Positions 3,384-56,632 of a stretch of DNA of 64,000 nucleotides are shown here, one piece after another. Every line of letters starts with the position of its first letter. Position 1 is the stretch's first letter. The stretch lies in the sequence record MK250027.1; one strand, given 5' to 3'. Below the pieces are notes generated by a model that saw only the letters and a program-made list of their open reading frames with translations, had not been told where the DNA came from and did no database searches. Both the position numbers and the translations under genes were made by a program.

Positions 3384-6300
3384 ATGAAATATAATGGAAC
3401 AGATAATATTATAACTGATAATGACATCCTTGTTACTTCCAGCGCTGGAAGTAACAAGGATCTTCATACAGTTATAGAAGAACAACAATATGACATTGAT
3501 GAATTAAAATCAAATGTCAAATGGATTTATAAATACGGTGGTGTCGGTGGTGTCGGTGGCTCCGGAAGTGGTTCTGTAAGTGGTGGAAAATGGTCTGCAG
3601 ATGTATATATTAATGATGTGCCAGTAACTAATGGTTCTATAACTGATTTATCGCAAAAACTTATTAATGATATAGCTCCTATTACTGTCAAAGTTTCTAT
3701 TAAAAACCCTTCTGCTGGTGGATATAAGTTTAAATTGGAATATGGATATGATGATGGTTCATTCCAAACATATCCTCAATCATTAACAACAGATAATAAT
3801 TGTAGTGTAGAATTTAATCTTAAAATTTCAAAAAATTCACAATTAGTTATAAAAGTAACAGATATAGATAATAATTATAAACAGACGATATATAAGTACT
3901 ATATTTATGGTTTAGATTATAAAATAATTCCAATGACTTATAATAGTCAAGGTGTTTTATATGAACTTAAAGATTTTGATTATAAACCTAGTCAATTTCC
4001 AAATGGTGTTGTTTATAGATTATCAATTAATAATTTCGCTGGATTTATAATTAATTATAATATTGTAAGTACTATTGATTGCAAAATTATATAGATTAAT
4101 GAATAGAATTATAAACTATATAATACAGATAAAAATAATGGTTCATATTATGATAATGAAAATTTAAAAGGTTATTTACAATCAAATGATACTATAATTA
4201 CATTAGATTATTTAATAACGCAAGATACTTTGAAAAATGAACTTAACTTTGGTTCTCAAACATTCATGGCGTATATAGAAAGTATAAGTAATGGTATTTC
4301 AAATAAAAATGAAGTAAAATCAGAATATTCTATTGTGCCTGATAGTAATCAATATGTTATATGTTTATCTGAATCTATTATGGGTAAAGTTTATGATGAT
4401 AATACAAATATTAGCATAGTAGAAGCACAAAAAGAAGGAAATGCGTTTAATGTAGGTGATTCCGTATCATTTAAATTAAGACCATTTAATTTCTCCTCTG
4501 ATACAATTGCAATTAATTATACATTAATTAATACGGAAAATGATATTAATACTTCTAGTACTATAAATTTAAAAGCAGGACGTTATATATCTCAATCATT
4601 TAAAGTATATTCGGGATGGAATAAGTTAATAATTAATACTAATATTGTAAAATATTATTATGGTGTAAAAATTTCAGCTTCTGTAAACTGGTATAATCAA
4701 AACGGTGAAAATAATTCAAAGGCAAAGAATCTAGATTTATCTTATGTTCGTTTTTATAATAGTATATCAGATAATATGAAAAATGAAACCAATTTTAAAT
4801 AGATATATGTCAATAACTATTTAGAATTAAATACTAATATAAATGCATAGGATAAAGTTATTAATTTATATAATAATAAAACGATAAATACAGCTACAAA
4901 AGTAGATACTCACTTTGCATTTAGTATTCAATTCTCAGGGGCTAATAATACAGATGATACTATTTTTGAATTAAAAAATGAAAAGAAAGATATATTATTT
5001 TCTGTAACATAGAGTTCTATTAAATGTAATTAGTTTACTAGTAATAATGATATAAAAATATATATACCAAAAGAAAATAATTATACACCATCTGATGCAA
5101 CTAAATATCATTTAGTTGATATTTATATTAAAAAAACAGATCCATATACATTAACAAAAACAGTTAATAATACAAATTCTGTTGATATGCAATATTATTT
5201 AAATGATTTAGCAGATGATATAGACGTTTCTAATTCTAAAAAAGAACCTCAATATTATATTGAAGTATATATTGATGGTATTACAGATGGTGTTACTAAA
5301 TATTTTGTATCAACATATCCAAATATATGTTATTTATGTTTAAAAAATATAAATGTATCATATAACTTATTTGAATTAGGTAAATTTAATAATGAATCAT
5401 TAAAATTTAATGATATTGACGCAGATTTATATTATTACACATATAAGTATATATTAACTAAAGGAAGTGGTGTTACAAAAAATAATATAGACTTAATATA
5501 TAACTTATCATCATTAGATTATAGTGCATCAATTTCTTCTGATTTAACAAAATAGTTGATATTAAGAAAGCATAATCAAATATGTATATCAAAAGAATAT
5601 TTAGAGCAGTTAAAAAAAATGTTAGATGTGCCTATTTATATAATAAATGTTGCACATACACGAGAGAATGATAATATTACATCTATTTTTTAGTGGTTAA
5701 ATGGAACGTATCAAGAGACTGATGATATTACTGCATGGCCTGTTCAAACGATAAGTGTTCAAGGAAAACATAAAACAGGTATTACGTATGTCGCTCCAGA
5801 TGATACAGTAGGTATAGAAGTTGAGTTTCCTGATGACGATGCATATACATAGGCATTGTTTAATATAAATATTCAAGGTTCATCAACTAGACAAAATCAT
5901 GGTAAAAACTTAGATTTAATCTTGGTTAATAAAGATACAGATACTCATAATAAATTATTATATTCTCCTAATTTTGATGAAAATGATTCAAATACATATT
6001 TACCAGAATCTAAATTTACATTAAAAGCAGATATTGTAGACTCAGGACATTCTAATAATACTGTAATGGGTAAATTTATTAATCAGAATACATAGAAATT
6101 TGATATAGCATCAAATGGACAATATAAAAGTTATATTAAAAACTGTTTGGAAGGATTTCCATGCATAATTATATTAAATGTTGATTATGAAGTTTCGGGT
6201 TCATCTTCTGAATATTATTTCATGGGTTTATATAACTTTAACTTAGGTCGTGGTTCATATTCAAATTTAGGATATGTTAATAATTCTATATTTGATAAAC

Positions 6301-9300
6301 AATTATCATCTGTAACAGCACTTAAACCATTTGAATTTTTTAAAACAACAACAGATGAATATGAATTGAGAACTGATTTTGGATGCGCAGAAATAACAGG
6401 TAATAATCATAAATTTGATTTTTCACAATGGGATGATACTATATTATATCCATTTGAAAATGAACATGGTAATACATATATGTGGGATGATATAGTAACC
6501 AGTTAGGAAGGTGCATTTAAAATCGCATTAAAATATTTCGTAAGAGATATTGCTATTTCTGGAGGTTATATATTTGATTATTTAGGTAAAGAAGCGATAG
6601 ACCATAAAAAATGGGATGCAGATGGTGGATGGAACCATATTGGCGGTGTTCCTGATGTCAGTAAACAATATAAGCGTACATCAGATGATACTACTGTATC
6701 ATATTATGATCCTACCATTAAAGTACCAGAAAAATCTAAATGGCAAACTATATTCCAACGTACAATGTAGGATGGTTTTGAATATAATGGAGATATATCA
6801 TATTCTCGATTAGATTATACATCCGCTGTAGAATATTACACAATTTGTATGGCATTTGGTTTGGTAGACTCTGTATAGAAAAATTTAAATGTTCGTACTT
6901 GGACATTAAATAAAACAAATAGAAAGGAAACAGATCCAGAAGAAAAAGATTTAACACGTTCTAAATTCTATATATCATTCTACGATATGGATACATGTTT
7001 GGGTATCGATAATAACTCTAATGATACAACAACTTTCTGTTTTTCTGATTATTGGGAATCAACTGATACTGAATAGAATGGTGTACATATTATTTCATCT
7101 ATTAATCAATACAGAGATTATTTTTCTGAAAAATATACAATTACTGATGCTTCTACAGGTATAAAATCTGGTGAAATTGGATACGATATACCATCATCAT
7201 TCTTATTTGGTGTCGCAAAATATGGTACAGAAGTATTTAACACAGATGAACTTTTAAAATTAGATTATCTTGAATATCCAACACCTACATTATTATGGAT
7301 AAGATATAGAGCAGGAAATACAACAGCATATGATAAACCTGGTACAGGATCTTTATAGAATGCACAATATTTCATGGATACTTATTATAAAAAACATATG
7401 GAAGGTGTGTCTGAATTAGTATTCAATTTAAATTATAAAGTTAAATATCTTGCATATAATATATAGGAAAAATGGGAATTTGATTCAACAAAGAAGAATA
7501 CCTTTATAGGAACATATACGATAAATAATAAAATTAATTATTCTTCAGGTTTCCATAATGATATACAAAAATTTAGAGGTCGTTCTATATATCGTGTATA
7601 TGATTGGTTAAATTCTAGATTACATATATTAGATGCATATTTTAATTTACAAGATTCACGAGAACTTTTATCTGTATCTGAAATAGAAAAATAGCATCAA
7701 ACAAATAAAAATACCACTAATACAGAACTTGTTCAATTACGTTTATCTGGCAATAACTTGGATGACAGTGTAAAAACTATAGTATCATTATTAAATACTT
7801 CTAATGATATTAACATTAAGAGTCAAATATTTAAATCTAGCACAACAGATAATCCAAAAATTAATTTTCCATCAAATCCTATAACGTTACAAGTTAAAGC
7901 TCAAAATTATTCACCAATAATGTTTGATGTCGGTGGTACAATTCAAGGTAAATATTTATTACGTTCATCTGCAAATACGTATTAGATAACATTTAGCGGT
8001 TCCGGCAATATAGCATTTGCACTTTATGGTTCAAATTAGATAACATATTTAAGTAATGTTACTTGGTATACACCAACATCAATGATAATTGAATCTTCAA
8101 ATCTTACAAATATTTATGGAAATAATCCTACATATAATGTAAGTGTTAATAAATTAATGTCTCCTGCATTATAGAAAATTGAATTAATGGGTTATAATTA
8201 TACGGGTTCATTAGAATTATCAGATATATCTACATATTCAAATTTAAATTTAATTAATATATCAAATACAGGAATAAATTTAAAGGCGACAGATATTAAT
8301 GTATCAACAATAAATGTATCTGGTGTTTCTGCTACAAAATGTGAAATTTCAAGATGTAATAAATTATCATCTTTAAAATTAAGTGAATTAAAAGTAACAG
8401 ATGAATTTTTATTAACTGTTAATTATTCAAGTAATGTATTATTTAATGAAATTGAAGCAAAACGATTCTCAGTTTCTTGCTCAGTTGTAAATTAGAATAA
8501 TACAATAGTTATTGATGGCTCACGTGGTAAATTTTAGACACTTGAAGAATTAACTATCTCTGGTTTTGCAAAAGTATAGATTTATTCTTGTCCAAAATTG
8601 TAGAAAGTTACTATTAGTGAAATTACGTCTGGAGATGATGCAAAAGATATATATTTGAAAGAACTTGCTATTATTAATTGTTGTACAGATAAATTATGTA
8701 CAGAATTTAATGTACTTTCATCTACATCATCAAGTTATGATAAAACATTAGATTTATATTCATTTAAGAAATTATCTAGAATATGCTTCTATGGAACATA
8801 GAATTTTGAACAAGCAATTTTACCAGAAACATTAAATTTGCAAGGTAGTGAATTTGGTAATTGTAAATCATTGAAATATGTAGATATTAAAACAAGTATT
8901 GGTACAAAAGCAAGTAAAATTACTATCAATGGATATGATAAATATGTATTATCTTCATCAGCTAAAAGTACTAGTGGATTAACATTTATTACATATACTG
9001 CACCAAATGTAGGATGTTTCTATAACTGTTATGAATTTAAGATGGAACGTACTGTAAATGATAGTTCAGTTGTACCTATTCGCGTAAGTAATTCCGTAAA
9101 ATCTTTGGAATACTTATTTGGACTTGATTCTCATAATAGTAATATAAATTTAGCAAAAATCTCGAATTTTATAGATAATATTTCTATAAGTAATAGTATT
9201 ACATCTATTAATTATATGTGTATGAATCAAGATGGCATTAAATTATCAAAGGAACAATTTGTCGCAGATGGACCAGATAAAGCAACCTTACACTTAGGTA

Positions 9301-52769: not shown

Positions 52770-53093
52770 ATGGGAGGTTTTGTTTATTTAATTTGCGATC
52801 CTGAATAGAATTGTTATAAAATAGGTGTAACAAGGAATATAGCATAGAATAGATTAAAGTAGTTATAGACTGGTAACTCATCAAAATTACATATGGTTTC
52901 AAATATATATTGTGAATATCCTTTTAGACTTGAAACAATGTTACATAATAAATTCAATCATAAACGTGCAAATGGTGAATGGTTCTATTTAGAATAGGAA
53001 GATATAAGTAATTTTAAAACTATATGTGAAGAAACAATATAGATGATTAATGTAATGAAAGATAATCCATTCTTTAGTAAAGATTTAAAATGA
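52770..53093 (+). CDS. T5orf172 / GIY-YIG-like domain protein (107 aa; all six Gln codons are TAG; absent from track)
   Basis: GFVYLI...YKIGVT...NRLK(Q)L(Q)TGN...LHNKF..KRANGEWF. Confidence 0.9.
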
Positions 53094-53135
53094 ATAAAGG
53101 TGATATAAGAATAATAAAACTTATATCACCTTTAT
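53094..53135. terminator. Bidirectional terminator (GGTGATA family)
   Basis: 16-bp stem ATAAAGGTGATATAAG/CTTATATCACCTTTAT. Confidence 0.85.
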
Positions 53136-53137
53136 TT

Positions 53138-53413
53138 TTAATTATCGTTCTTTTCTAATTCCTTATTAATATAATCCATATCTTCATCTGTTAAATCGCC
53201 AAATGATGTGAATAAATCTTTATTAATAAGTCCATATCTCATAAGATATGCTAATGTCATTCTTACAGCATAATCTGCAATATCATAAGTTGTTGTAACT
53301 TCTAAATTTTGTAAATCTGGATTATTACCAACTACATTAGAAACTTTATCAACAATCTTATCACATGTTTTTTTCATTGAATTTAATTCATTATTTGTTA
53401 ATTTGGTACTCAT
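53138..53413 (-). CDS. Hypothetical protein (91 aa)
   Basis: Likely start is ATG 53413 (MSTKLTNNE), downstream of TAAACT-N18-TATAAT. Confidence 0.65.
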   Translation of the reverse strand: MSTKLTNNELNSMKKTCDKIVDKVSNVVGNNPDLQNLEVTTTYDIADYAVRMTLAYLMRYGLINKDLFTSFGDLTDEDMDYINKELEKNDN

Positions 53414-53469
53414 AATATCATTAAATAATTTAATTATTATATTACAACGATATGCATAAAGTTTAGAAA

Positions 53470-53985
53470 TAAAAAATGAGTTATTAGACTTATGCACAAT
53501 CTAATAACTCACAAACACTTTATTCTAAATTTATTATATTTACATCTTATTTAAAGATGTCCCTCATGTTGTTATTCGTACGAACATAAGTTTCTGCCTC
53601 TTATGATTCACTTTAACGTTTGCCCGTTATATAATGAATGTTCATACTGAACTTCGTTATGTCCATAAGGACAAATGGCTGAGAACTTGACCAACACCTA
53701 CTCTCAATGCTGTAACGTTGGAGTTACATGTTCACACAACTCTTATTTCTAAGAGGTTGAGAGCATACCCACGACTTTTGTAAAAAATCGTAAACTCTTA
53801 CTTGATAGGTTTCATAGAAATTCATTTCATACCAACTTCCTTGGAAGGATTCAATGTGTCCCCACATTTAGCACGATACTACTCTTACTATTCTCATGTC
53901 TTTCCTTGCGGTACTCGAATCATGTCTACATATTACAGTAGAATAAGGGTATTTTAACCACCAAGTGTCGCACACTTTTGCTTAT
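53470..53985 (-). ncRNA. Large structured ncRNA candidate B (about 510 nt) with GNRA tetraloops; family unassigned
   Basis: No ORF; visibly higher GC than the flanks; stems AATGTG-GGGA-CACATT, CTCTTA-GAAA-TAAGAG, CC-GCAA-GG flanked by AGTA/AAAG, TGTAAC/GTTACA, TGTCC/GGACA, long-range CTCTCAA/TTGAGAG; TATAAT at 53991-53996. Confidence 0.7.
53477..53511 (-). terminator. Terminator closing ncRNA candidate B
   Basis: TGAGTTATTAGA/TCTAATAACTCA with a T tract on the minus strand. Confidence 0.8.
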
Positions 53986-54039
53986 ACATAATTATATGTT
54001 AAATAAAATAATTTCCAATATTATTATTCTTATTATATA

Positions 54040-54580
54040 TTCTTTAGACTTGAAAGACGAGGTGCGACCAATAGCATTTCTTCCTTTTGAGAAGAACCCA
54101 CTAAATCGCCTTTCTGAAATTTCGTTACACCAATGTAACCATATTTCTACTCTTATAACTTACCTATTGTTTTTCAATAGTAATCTTACCATTTCTGAAC
54201 AAGTTACCAGCTTGTATAAATTATTTGGTTTATAATTTATATAAGATTCATTATAACAATTAATATTAGCACTGGGAATTGGTATTCCGATCACTAAATA
54301 TCCATAAACTTAAACTTCTATTGTATTACTACTCACATCAGTTGTCTATCAAACTTCCAATGTATATAAACTTCATCTCAGGAATTATCCCATCAATTTC
54401 CCATTTATACAGGCACTTACTAAGTTTGGTTTTCTGTAGAATGCTCATTATTCATAAACATCGATAAACATGTCTACTGTTTACCTTTATCACATCACTG
54501 CTTTATCCTTACCCCACCGAAACCATGGGTTTATATTTCAAAGAACTCATCTTGAATAAAATAAATTCATTCAAATTTTA
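54040..54580 (-). ncRNA. Large structured ncRNA candidate C (about 540 nt)
   Basis: No credible ORF; TAGACT-N17-TATAAT immediately upstream; stems CTATTG/CAATAG, GTTACA/TGTAAC, TTCTTC/GAAGAA, TATAAATTAT/ATAATTTATA, GGAAT/ATTCC, ACAAG/CTTGT. Confidence 0.55.
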
Positions 54581-54585
54581 TACTT

Positions 54586-54614
54586 ATTATATAATCAATA
54601 ATTTAAAAAGTCTA
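54586..54614 (-). promoter_or_regulatory. sigma70-like promoter TAGACT-N17-TATAAT
   Basis: Plus strand attata and agtcta 17 nt apart; a second copy TAGACT-N17-TATAAA at 54702-54730. Confidence 0.65.
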
Positions 54615-54756
54615 TATTTTAATAGATATATTTCAAAATTTTTATTGTTAACTGTTATTAAAAATATTAAATATTAAAATCTTTTTAAACTTGATTCTAA
54701 ATTTATATATTAAATTAAATAGAAAGTCTATATTTCAATACAATATTTTTAAAAAA

Positions 54757-54933
54757 TTATTTTAAACAATATTCTAAATCAAATATAAAGTCTCCTAATA
54801 GTTCAATCTTTTTCCTAATAAGTTCTGATTCTAAATCAAATTTATGATCTATACAAAAATTTAATTCAATATATAACTTATCTCTATTAGATTTCCATTT
54901 ATCTATTAATTCTTTCTTTGTTAATTTTTCCAT
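54757..54933 (-). CDS. Small hypothetical protein (58 aa; absent from track)
   Basis: MEKLTKKELIDKWKSNRDKLY... to TAA; starts 1 nt after the upstream stop. Confidence 0.6.
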   Translation of the reverse strand: MEKLTKKELIDKWKSNRDKLYIELNFCIDHKFDLESELIRKKIELLGDFIFDLEYCLK

Positions 54934-54934
54934 C

Positions 54935-55459
54935 TTAAAAATTCATTATATTTACACCAGCAATAGAAAGAAATTTTATATTCTTAATAATTTCACATGC
55001 TTTATCTTCTGGAAATATAATTTTAAAATCATCATAAACATCCATTACTTCTTGCCATTTACATTCATCTCTTGGTGCTTCCATAGAAGTATATATTTTA
55101 GCAATAAGCATTCTTTTTTTAAATTGATTATAAAACGTACTTCTTGGATACATCCCATGTTCATATCCTCCATTTGGATGATGTCCCATCCAATCAGGTT
55201 CAATATAATGACTCCATTTTACTCCTTCAAAATATAAAGTCTTATCTGGTTTTACACTAATAGAAATACTTTTATTTTTATCTTTTTGATATTCTATAAA
55301 TTCAAGAAAATTATTTAATGCATCAAGATATTTCTCTGCATATTCTGCTTCTTCTTTTTTATCAAAAATATAACTAAAACCAAAAGTATTATCTACAACT
55401 TCATATTTTACTTTTGTCTCAATCTTATTAATCATATTATTATTTTTATAATTAATCAT
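54935..55459 (-). CDS. Hypothetical protein
   Basis: Intact ORF; start probably ATG 55459 or 55434. Confidence 0.65.
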   Translation of the reverse strand: MINYKNNNMINKIETKVKYEVVDNTFGFSYIFDKKEEAEYAEKYLDALNNFLEFIEYQKDKNKSISISVKPDKTLYFEGVKWSHYIEPDWMGHHPNGGYEHGMYPRSTFYNQFKKRMLIAKIYTSMEAPRDECKWQEVMDVYDDFKIIFPEDKACEIIKNIKFLSIAGVNIMNF

Positions 55460-56199: not shown

Positions 56200-56632
56200 N
56201 NNNNNNNNNNNNNNNNNNNNNNNNNNNNNNNNNNNNNNNNNNNNNNNNNNNNNNNNNNNNNNNNNNNNNNNNNNNNNNNNNNNNNNNNNNNNNNNNNNNN
56301 NNNNNNNNNNNNNNNNNNNNNNNNNNNNNNNNNNNNNNNNNNNNNNNNNNNNNNNNNNNNNNNNNNNNNNNNNNNNNNNNNNNNNNNNNNNNNNNNNNNN
56401 NNNNNNNNNNNNNNNNNNNNNNNNNNNNNNNNNNNNNNNNNNNNNNNNNNNNNNNNNNNNNNNNNNNNNNNNNNNNNNNNNNNNNNNNNNNNNNNNNNNN
56501 NNNNNNNNNNNNNNNNNNNNNNNNNNNNNNNNNNNNNNNNNNNNNNNNNNNNNNNNNNNNNNNNNNNNNNNNNNNNNNNNNNNNNNNNNNNNNNNNNNNN
56601 NNNNNNNNNNNNNNNNNNNNNNNNNNNNNNNN
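56200..56632. other. Assembly gap (run of N)
   Basis: About 430 N characters. Confidence 0.98.

What the first reader, a model, noticed from the sequence alone, without database searches (positions are those of the whole stretch)
53470..53985. Stand-alone ornate ncRNA (about 510 nt) with GNRA loops and a group II-like 5' end but no visible catalytic domain V
Seen: an ORF-free, GC-elevated minus-strand block between a TATAAT (53991-53996) and a clean terminator. It is packed with stems whose loops are GNRA only on the minus strand (GGGA, GAAA, GCAA). It also has an AGUA-CC-GCAA-GG-AAAG E-loop-like module and a nested CUCUCAA/UUGAGAG helix enclosing two hairpins. The 5' end carries GUGCGACAC. 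Known: GUGYG starts group II introns, and large RNA-only motifs (ROOL, GOLLD) occur in phages. Inference: no domain V (AGC triad/GAAA/AC bulge), intron ORF or split host gene is visible, so this may be an independently transcribed large RNA of an unknown or intron-derived class.
Basis: partly seen in the sequence, partly recalled or inferred. Interest (0 to 1): 0.85.

Follow-up and report, generated by a model that had tools for sequence, protein, structure and literature searches.

The report
Divergent GOLLD RNA in Lak megaphage
The flagged block is the back half of a roughly 1,000-base non-coding RNA of Prevotella megaphage Lak, a divergent member of the known phage GOLLD family (RNAs that assemble into hollow RNA cages); it is abundant in animal-gut RNA libraries and is not related to group II introns.

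Summary
The conserved, ORF-free, structured RNA runs from about 54579-54561 to about 53592. A variable tail and an intrinsic terminator (53512-53476) follow.

The window is Prevotella phage Lak-B. Rfam finds nothing at curated thresholds. In E-value mode the GOLLD model RF02032 matches 54114-53676 end to end (62.8 bits, E 1e-15, gathering score 150). Relatives in other huge gut phages score 45-113 bits. They sit in tRNA/tmRNA islands, and several carry a tRNA in the GOLLD linker.

The "GUGCGAC group II start" is one strand of a covarying pairing that bridges the linker. Canonical GOLLDs have this pairing at the same place with other letters.

Covariation supports both halves of the RNA. Contigs from four animal-gut RNA-seq studies cover only this RNA and leave its flanks empty.

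Differences from canonical GOLLDs:
- a 5' half with no detectable similarity to theirs
- a conserved 84-nt 3' extension
- no tRNA nearby

Cage assembly is inferred, not shown. Verdict: new, divergent member of a known kind; moderate interest.

The parts
54586..54733 (-). Upstream AT-rich region with two copies of ATATAGACTTT (54733-54723 and 54617-54607). The second copy is followed by TATAAT at 54591-54586. Candidate promoter only.
   Evidence: The motif occurs exactly only twice in the window, both times here. TAGACT-17-TATAAT was scored, but promoter-like sites in this region are no more frequent than in shuffles (20 found against 19 expected). This part is inferred.
54115..54579 (-). 5' domain, about 465 nt. 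It contains motifs conserved across the Lak-type family (AAGGAUAAnnCAGUGAUG, CACnGAAAAG, GAGUnGUAAnACAAUAG) and Lak-specific insertions. The 5' end is uncertain between about 54579 and 54561.
   Evidence: Alignment A4 and RNAalifold give 57 pairs, 44 with changes on both sides. RNA-seq contigs reach 54561, 54549 and 54511. No similarity to the 5' halves of three canonical GOLLDs.
54052..54114 (-). First hairpin of the GOLLD 3' domain (P13/P14-like). The outer stem is GAAAGGCGA with UCGUCUUUC. The apical loop UCAAAAG is conserved. The internal-loop strand GUCGCAC lies at 54068-54062.
   Evidence: RF02032 model positions 1-63. Covariation. Coordinates.
53984..54051 (-). Variable AU-rich linker (J13/15-like). 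Several relatives have a tRNA at this position.
   Evidence: tRNAs in the linker. 14 variable sites in 54000-54049 within the Lak clade. The linker is replaced in an RNA-seq variant, 58 nt by 68 nt.
53676..53983 (-). Conserved GOLLD 3' core. It comprises AAGCAAAAGU, GUGCGAC (53973-53967, pairs with 54068-54062), a long-range helix (53966-53958 with 53808-53800), AUACCC (53952-53947) with GGGUAU (53770-53765), hairpins with CGCAA, GGGA and GAAA loops, the CUCUCAA/UUGAGAG helix, and a terminal hairpin with the loop UUCUCAG.
   Evidence: RF02032 match at 62.8 bits, E 1e-15. 68 pairs, 53 with double-sided changes. The tool count on the last 124 nt gives 95.4% paired, 26 of 31 pairs with changes on both sides, and 0 of 500 shuffles as high. 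At most 2 variable sites per 50 nt within the Lak clade.
53592..53675 (-). Lak-specific conserved 3' extension made of three or four hairpins. It may be a remnant of the insert-bearing tRNA that follows the RNA in relatives.
   Evidence: 3 variable sites per 50 nt down to about 53600, then 26 per 50. The X1 RNA-seq contig ends at 53592. Partial alignment to the relatives' tRNA. No tRNA match in the Rfam scan at E<=10. The origin is inferred.
53466..53591 (-). Variable tail with an intrinsic terminator (hairpin 53512-53476 plus a U run).
   Evidence: Lak-A/C have a different hairpin plus U run at the same place.

Best explanation
The region 54579/54561-53592 on the minus strand encodes a stand-alone non-coding RNA of about 970-990 nt in Prevotella megaphage Lak. 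It is a divergent member of the GOLLD family.

Shown:
- Its 3' half has the GOLLD 3'-domain architecture: a first hairpin, a variable linker and a conserved multi-helix core.
- A pairing that bridges the linker occurs at the same place in canonical GOLLDs.
- Both halves carry extensive compensatory substitutions across huge-phage relatives.
- RNA libraries from animal guts contain contigs that cover just this RNA and not its flanks.

Inferred:
- It is transcribed from its own promoter just upstream of 54580 and ends at or before the terminator at 53512-53476.
- Like the three GOLLDs solved by cryo-EM, it probably assembles with copies of itself into a closed dihedral RNA cage, with the AU-rich linker facing inward (about 50% likely). 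The 3' domains would form the rings and the family-specific 5' domain the caps.
- Because the 5' cap domain differs, the subunit number may differ from 12 or 14.
- The biological role is probably tied to tRNA or translation during infection, as in relatives where tRNAs flank the RNA and sit in its linker. This remains unknown, as it does for all GOLLDs.
For: Identity of the window: the RNA region (53450-54650) is 100% identical to Lak-B2/B4/B7/B8, and the RNA is present in all 15 Lak records.

Rfam: GOLLD RF02032 matches 54114-53676 on the minus strand, model 1-416 of 416, 62.8 bits, E 1.1e-15.

Relatives: they were found with three independent DNA motifs. They score 45.5-113.5 bits, full length. 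They lie in tRNA/tmRNA islands with tRNAs in the linker.

Reciprocal test: a covariance model built only from the Lak-type last 124 nt finds canonical GOLLD L193 (226 bits to Rfam) at exactly its 3' end, E 5e-5.

Linker-bridging pairing: GUCGCAC/GUGCGAC in Lak. It covaries within the family. It is present at the same position in canonical GOLLDs as CCUGAAG/CUUCAGG, GGGGAAG/CUUUCCC and GGGGCAG/CUGUCCC.

Covariation:
- 53 of 68 pairs (3' domain) and 44 of 57 pairs (5' domain) show changes on both sides.
- The tool count gives 95.4% paired, 26 of 31 pairs, 0 of 500 shuffles as high, and a score of 0.748 against at most 0.116 when slid.

Expression, from four RNA-seq studies:
- Contigs of 971, 926, 880 and 832 nt lie on 53592-54561.
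- Flanks 53224-53547 and 54601-55300 have depth 0.
- The neighbouring gene has depth 6 against 3,800-9,000 on the RNA.

Strand: the match, the G-U pairs and the terminator are all on the minus strand. The minus-strand fold is -233 kcal/mol against -173 for the plus strand.

Coding: no ORF with or without TAG=Q.

Family properties come from PMC12286853 and PMC12990946.
Against: - The Rfam score is far below the curated gathering score (62.8 against 150), and 17.6 bits are flagged as composition bias.
- The 5' half has no detectable sequence similarity to the 5' halves of three canonical GOLLDs.
- ARAGORN and Rfam at gathering thresholds find no tRNA in the 64-kb window, unlike the usual GOLLD context.
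- Logan contigs cannot show strand, exact ends or a single transcript.
- The promoter call is no better than chance.
- Multimer formation and function are extrapolated from other family members.
- I could not map the known inter-subunit contacts onto this sequence.
- The covariation structures were derived from the same alignments they were scored on.
Confidence: 0.85

Rival explanations
1. One reading: a stand-alone RNA of an unknown class, or one derived from a group II intron whose catalytic domain V has been lost.
For: GUGCG occurs at 53973-53969. Rfam reports nothing at curated thresholds.
Against: No group II family (domain V/VI or D1-D4 models) matches at E<=10. GUGCGAC is about 600 nt inside the RNA. 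It pairs with GUCGCAC at 54068-54062 and covaries with it, and the same pairing exists in canonical GOLLDs with unrelated letters. The GOLLD model matches end to end.
Confidence: 0.02
2. A separate RNA class that only resembles the GOLLD 3' domain by convergence or by a biased, spurious covariance-model match.
For: Score below the gathering cut-off with a composition-bias term. Unrelated 5' half. nhmmer sees only marginal sequence similarity to canonical 3' domains (E about 1e-3).
Against: Relatives with zero bias reach 79-113 bits over the whole model. There is a reciprocal hit on a canonical GOLLD in the correct register. Signature motifs are shared: the UCAAAAG loop, AAGCAAAAGU, the CGCAA loop and the UCUCAG terminal loop. 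So is the unannotated linker-bridging pairing. The relatives have the same genomic habit: phage tRNA islands and a tRNA in the linker.
Confidence: 0.06
3. Two RNAs rather than one: the transcript is cut in the linker, as tRNA excision would do in relatives. That would give a 5' piece (5' domain plus first hairpin) and a 3' core. The two pieces could stay together through the linker-bridging pairing or act separately.
For: Relatives carry a tRNA in the linker, which RNase P and RNase Z would be expected to excise. The linker-bridging pairing could hold the halves together. One RNA-seq run has separate short high-depth pieces (X3).
Against: The Lak linker has no tRNA. Contigs of 832-971 nt cross the linker in three runs. 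Published work proposes that linker tRNAs stay covalently attached inside the cage (PMC12286853, PMC12990946).
Confidence: 0.1
4. A decayed protein-coding gene, or the long leader of the downstream gene (53413-53141).
For: It lies between minus-strand genes, and the next ORF starts about 50 nt after the terminator.
Against: No long ORF in either code. Substitutions are compensatory in helices. A terminator separates it from the gene. RNA-seq contigs stop at 53592-53700, and the gene region has depth 0 in all four runs.
Confidence: 0.02

Closest known systems
GOLLD RNA (Rfam RF02032; Weinberg et al. 2009; cryo-EM structures of env-38, PDB 9MEE, and Streptococcus agalactiae GOLLD, PDB 9L0R)
   Same: - Phage-encoded and ORF-free, about 1 kb.
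- Two-domain layout with a conserved 3' domain matched end to end by the family model.
- A variable internal linker after the first hairpin; relatives have a tRNA there.
- A linker-bridging pairing at the same place.
- Conserved UCAAAAG, AAGCAAAAGU, GNRA (L24-like) and UCUCAG loops.
- High abundance in RNA libraries.
   Different: - Scores 62.8 bits against the curated 150.
- The 5' half is unrelated in sequence to three canonical members.
- An extra conserved 84-nt 3' extension.
- Own terminator, with no tRNA found in the 64-kb window.
- The loop matched to the model's CGCAA hairpin is GGGA in Lak.
- The host lineage is a Bacteroidota-infecting megaphage with TAG recoding. No paper in the searched library reports GOLLD from such phages.
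ROOL RNA (Rfam RF03087)
   Same: A large, ornate, phage-associated RNA found near tRNA islands that forms RNA-only cages. The likely mode of action is the same.
   Different: No ROOL match at E<=10. ROOL has intertwined 5' and 3' regions rather than two separable domains (PMC12286853).
Group II intron
   Same: Only the pentamer GUGCG and a richness in GNRA loops.
   Different: No domain V/VI, no D1-D4 match, no intron ORF and no exons. The pentamer is internal and base-paired.

Membership tests
GOLLD RNA | Statistically significant, full-length match of the conserved 3' domain to the family covariance model | tested here: met
   RF02032 model 1-416 of 416, E 1.1e-15, minus strand 54114-53676. 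Relatives reach E 1e-9 to 5e-29.
GOLLD RNA | Reaches Rfam's curated gathering score (150 bits) | tested here: not met
   62.8 bits for the window and 45.5-113.5 for relatives. Canonical controls score 180-295. This is a curation threshold, not a biological property.
GOLLD RNA | Reciprocal recognition: a model built from these sequences finds canonical GOLLDs in register | tested here: met
   R1 (the last 124 nt, Lak-type sequences only) hits L193 6954-7081 at E 5.4e-5, with the same 3' end as the Rfam match. L188 is hit only at E 0.21.
GOLLD RNA | A variable linker after the first 3'-domain hairpin (J13/15) that may carry a tRNA, closed by a covarying pairing | tested here: met
   The linker is 54051-53984. 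tRNAs sit in the linker in L005, L014, L026, L044 and L047. The pairing GUCGCAC/GUGCGAC covaries and is present in canonical L188, L193 and L194.
GOLLD RNA | Helices of the 3' domain supported by compensatory substitutions | tested here: met
   26 of 31 pairs with changes on both sides, 0 of 500 shuffles as high.
GOLLD RNA | A less conserved 5' domain of about 400 nt preceding the 3' domain | tested here: met
   A structured 5' domain of about 465 nt is conserved within the Lak-type family. It is unrelated in sequence to canonical 5' halves. The literature describes this region as variable.
GOLLD RNA | Encoded in phages or prophages, often next to tRNA arrays | tested here: inconclusive
   Phage origin is met. 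tRNA arrays are adjacent in all non-Lak relatives. No tRNA is found in the 64-kb Lak window.
GOLLD RNA | Accumulates as an abundant RNA during phage growth | tested here: inconclusive
   Contigs in four RNA-seq studies cover only the RNA, at depths up to thousands against 0-6 on the flanks. Strand, ends and timing are not shown.
GOLLD RNA | Homo-oligomeric dihedral nanocage (10-, 12- or 14-mer) | not testable with these tools
   Known for env-38 and Sag GOLLD. This needs mass photometry or cryo-EM of the Lak RNA.
Group II intron | Domain V/VI, the D1-D4 scaffold and a 5' GUGYG at the splice site | tested here: not met
   No group II family matches at E<=10. GUGCG is internal and paired.
ROOL RNA | Match to the ROOL covariance model | tested here: not met
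   No match at E<=10 in 53300-54400, and none at gathering score in the window.

The most novel reading that the evidence does not exclude
The Lak-type RNAs form a separate GOLLD subfamily. A shared ring-forming 3' domain is joined to an unrelated cap domain (plus an 84-nt extension in Lak), so it would build a cage of different stoichiometry or geometry. In Lak it has become independent of tRNA arrays and is among the most abundant phage transcripts in gut RNA. This would point to a cage function that is not simply tRNA storage.
Probability: 0.25. Interest if true: 0.7.

Novelty: new member of a known kind. Interest (0 to 1): 0.5.

Why it matters
GOLLD is one of very few natural RNAs known to build protein-free cages, and its function is unknown. 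This finding extends the family to Lak megaphages and to other 295-412 kb gut phages of animals and people. It shows that Rfam's cut-off misses this branch.

It provides about 25 diverse sequences in which the ring-forming 3' domain is kept while the cap domain is swapped. That is a natural experiment for how the cap sets subunit number.

Lak's copy has no tRNA in or near it. That tests the idea that GOLLD cages exist to hold tRNAs. Its abundance in public gut metatranscriptomes makes it experimentally reachable.

Tried and rejected
- Rfam at gathering thresholds on the whole window gave nothing. Only the E-value mode revealed GOLLD.
- The group II, RNase P, tmRNA and ROOL ideas gave no matches.
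- ARAGORN finds no tRNA in the window.
- Reading the region with TAG=Q, the Lak code, gives no convincing ORF.
- PHROG scans of seven neighbouring proteins gave no function.
- The sigma-70-type promoter scan found no more sites than in shuffles, so I treat the promoter as unproven.
- Searching whole Lak-A1 and Lak-C1 records for further copies returned zero candidates at the tool's first look, which is uninformative. Two complete relatives (412 kb and 295 kb) have one copy each.
- The genome-contig scan with the 5'-domain motif gave 120 rows and stopped at its limit. Only one row is real: a 2-kb contig binned as Clostridium sp., probably phage.
- Testing whether the Lak 3' extension is a tRNA gave no match. 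Only a partial alignment links it to the relatives' insert-bearing tRNA.
- I tried to map the published inter-subunit contacts (L14, L15/L20, L21, L24) onto Lak. Without the solved sequences and a structure-aware aligner, only L14 (UCAAAAG) and L24 (GNRA) could be placed, and only by position.
- No complex or structure prediction was attempted, because the tools handle proteins only.

Full report
**What is at the coordinates**

These are TATAAT (53996-53991), GUGCGAC (53973-53967) and the AGUA-CC-GCAA-GG-AAAG module. There are also GGGA, GAAA and GCAA loops, and the CUCUCAA/UUGAGAG helix (53763-53757 with 53707-53701) that encloses two hairpins. A clean terminator sits at 53512-53476.

The block folds better than shuffled sequence (z -4.09). 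It has no ORF of note under table 11 or with TAG read as Gln. Raised G+C does not stop at 53985; it continues to about 54600.

**What the window is**

The RNA region (53450-54650) is 100% identical to Prevotella phage Lak-B2/B4/B7/B8. It is 88-90% identical to Lak-A1, Lak-A2 and Lak-C1, and all 15 Lak records contain it. The conserved stretch in those genomes runs from about 54577 to about 53575, roughly twice the flagged length.

**Identity**

Rfam at curated thresholds reports nothing in the window. In E-value mode the GOLLD model RF02032 matches 54114-53676 on the minus strand over all 416 model positions. The score is 62.8 bits with E 1.1e-15, against a gathering score of 150.

According to Kretsch et al. 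(PMC12286853), GOLLD has three parts:
- a variable 5' region
- a universally conserved 3' region
- a disordered variable linker inside the 3' region, which sometimes holds a tRNA

The Rfam model corresponds to that 3' region. In the Lak RNA the first hairpin is 54114-54052 and the AU-rich linker is 54051-53984. The conserved core is 53983-53676.

The flagged feature begins in the middle of the RNA.

**Relatives**

Three short DNA motifs, taken from different parts of the RNA, retrieved huge-phage contigs from IMG/VR. A profile search sorted them into three groups:
- twelve full-length relatives, 65-90% identical to one another and about 50% to Lak
- three more distant ones, about 55% identical
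- eight still more distant

All carry a full-length GOLLD match below the cut-off, at 45.5-113.5 bits. All lie in tRNA/tmRNA islands. Several have a tRNA inside the linker. Two complete genomes of 412 kb and 295 kb have one copy each.

Canonical GOLLDs fetched as controls score 180-295 bits.

**Is it really GOLLD?**

Three tests independent of the Rfam score agree.

1. A covariance model built only from the last 124 nt of Lak-type sequences finds canonical GOLLD L193 at exactly its 3' end (E 5e-5). It finds L188 in the same register, though weakly (E 0.21).
2. GUCGCAC (54068-54062) lies in the 3'-side internal loop of the first hairpin. It pairs with GUGCGAC (53973-53967) just after the linker. 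The pairing covaries within the family: GCUCCAC/GUGGAGC, GUCACGC/GCGUGAC, GCUGAAC/GUUCGGC. Canonical GOLLDs have a 7-bp complement at the same two places with unrelated letters: CCUGAAG/CUUCAGG, GGGGAAG/CUUUCCC, GGGGCAG/CUGUCCC. The supposed group II 5' end is one strand of this GOLLD pairing.
3. Signature loops of the family model are kept: UCAAAAG, AAGCAAAAGU, CGCAA, a GNRA loop at the L24-like hairpin, and UCUCAG.

No group II, ROOL, RNase P or tmRNA model matches, even at E<=10.

**Structure and covariation**

For the 3' domain (22 sequences), RNAalifold predicts 68 pairs, and 53 of them show changes on both sides. The long-range helix 53966-53958 with 53808-53800 also covaries.

For the 5' domain (17 sequences) there are 57 pairs, 44 with changes on both sides. 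My own controls give 53 against a shuffle mean of 34 (maximum 42), and 44 against 25.6 (maximum 34). Slid partners give 12-30. These structures were derived from the same alignments, so the comparison is partly circular.

The tool count on a model-made alignment of 29 sequences for the last 124 nt is stronger:
- 95.4% of cells paired
- 26 of 31 pairs with changes on both sides
- 0 of 500 shuffles as high
- score 0.748 against at most 0.116 when slid

The full RNA folds to -233 kcal/mol on the minus strand and -173 on the plus strand.

**Ends and expression**

I laid Logan contigs from four animal-gut RNA-seq runs, from four studies, on 52900-55300. They lie only on the RNA:
- X1: one 971-nt contig, equal to 53592-54561
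- X7: a 926-nt contig on 53630-54511
- X4: contigs of 832 and 880 nt, reaching from 53676-53677 to 54510
- X3: pieces at word depths of 3,800-9,000

The flanks 53224-53547 and 54601-55300 have depth 0 in all four runs. The neighbouring gene reaches 6 in one run. DNA contamination would not give this pattern, so the RNA accumulates to high levels. Contigs cannot show strand or exact ends.

Within the Lak clade, including five more metagenome variants, variable sites number:
- at most 2 per 50 nt in the 3' core
- 14 in the linker
- 3-13 in the 5' domain
- 3 in 53675-53600
- 26 beyond about 53600

The conserved RNA therefore ends near 53592, the same place as the X1 contig. What follows is a variable tail with a terminator.

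Upstream, an exact 11-mer (ATATAGACTTT) occurs only twice in the window, both times just before the RNA. The second copy is followed by TATAAT at 54591-54586. This promoter assignment is weak.

**How Lak's copy differs**

- Its 5' half is conserved among Lak-type RNAs but has no detectable similarity to the 5' halves of three canonical GOLLDs.
- It carries Lak-specific insertions in the 5' domain.
- It has an 84-nt conserved 3' extension.
- Its linker has no tRNA, and ARAGORN and Rfam at gathering thresholds find no tRNA in the 64-kb window.

In relatives a tRNA follows the RNA by 13-15 nt. That tRNA has 64 nt where the anticodon arm should be. The Lak extension aligns partly with its 5' half, so it may be a remnant. 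This is inference.

Linkers without a tRNA in several relatives keep GGUUCAAA-like stretches that resemble a T-loop. This suggests decayed tRNAs.

**Mechanism**

Solved GOLLDs assemble without protein into dihedral cages. The S. agalactiae 3' domain alone forms mainly decamers. The full-length S. agalactiae RNA forms dodecamers, and env-38 forms 14-mers. The 5' domain acts as the cap that fixes the number, and the linker points inward (PMC12286853 and PMC12990946).

By homology I expect the Lak RNA to form such a cage, with a stoichiometry set by its own cap domain. I put this at about 50%, because no tool here can test it. The biological role is unknown for the whole family.

**Novelty**

The held literature has 34 papers that mention GOLLD. 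None links it to Lak, megaphages, huge or jumbo phages, or Prevotella. I classify this as a new, divergent member of a known kind, of moderate interest.

Noticed in passing
L014 6100-5984, 5990-5869, 5873-5751 (minus); L005 9662-9784, 9778-9900, 10082-10202; also L007, L011, L019, L020, L024, L026, L027, L044, L045, L047, L051: A structured element of about 120 nt occurs 1-5 times per locus. It is often in head-to-tail tandem between a tRNA and the GOLLD-like RNA of the non-Lak huge phages. Conserved motifs are GAUACCAGAGGAGAAC, GAUGUAGACAAAUGGGCA and GUGCAAAUC. 36 pairs are predicted, 23 with changes on both sides. There is no Rfam match at E<=0.01, and it is absent from the window. It looks like an undescribed small RNA family.
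   Followed up: partly
L007 5916-6040; L011 3736-3858; L014 4637-4757; L005 11390-11510: A tRNA lies directly 3' of the GOLLD-like RNA in relatives. It has good acceptor, D and T arms but 64 nt in place of the usual 11-nt anticodon region (Rfam tRNA 34-42 bits; ARAGORN does not call it). It may be an insert- or intron-bearing tRNA, or a tRNA-like processing signal.
   Followed up: partly
L011 1352-1443, L014 2301-2377, L019 8838-8923: tRNAs with anticodon CUA (reported by ARAGORN as Pyl) lie in the same tRNA islands, together with phage tmRNA genes. This fits TAG recoding in these huge phages, as described for Lak phages in published work outside the papers read here.
   Followed up: no
window about 56200-56500: A stretch with zero G+C in the composition profile is presumably a run of N, either an assembly gap or masked.
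   Followed up: no
window 54733-54723 and 54617-54607: The exact 11-mer ATATAGACTTT occurs only twice in 64 kb. The copies are 116 nt apart and both lie just upstream of the RNA, each followed about 17 nt later by a TATAA-like hexamer. They may be tandem promoters.
   Followed up: partly
L133 (2,010-bp contig binned as Clostridium sp. SUG825): This is the only true Lak-type GOLLD among the 120 genome contigs rows returned by the motif scan. The short contig is probably a phage fragment binned into a bacterial MAG.
   Followed up: no
window 53866-53851: The hairpin aligned to the Rfam model's CGCAA-loop hairpin has a GGGA loop in Lak, L035 and L037, but GGCA in most relatives. If this loop makes an inter-subunit contact, as the corresponding region does in solved GOLLDs, the contact differs in Lak.
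   Followed up: no
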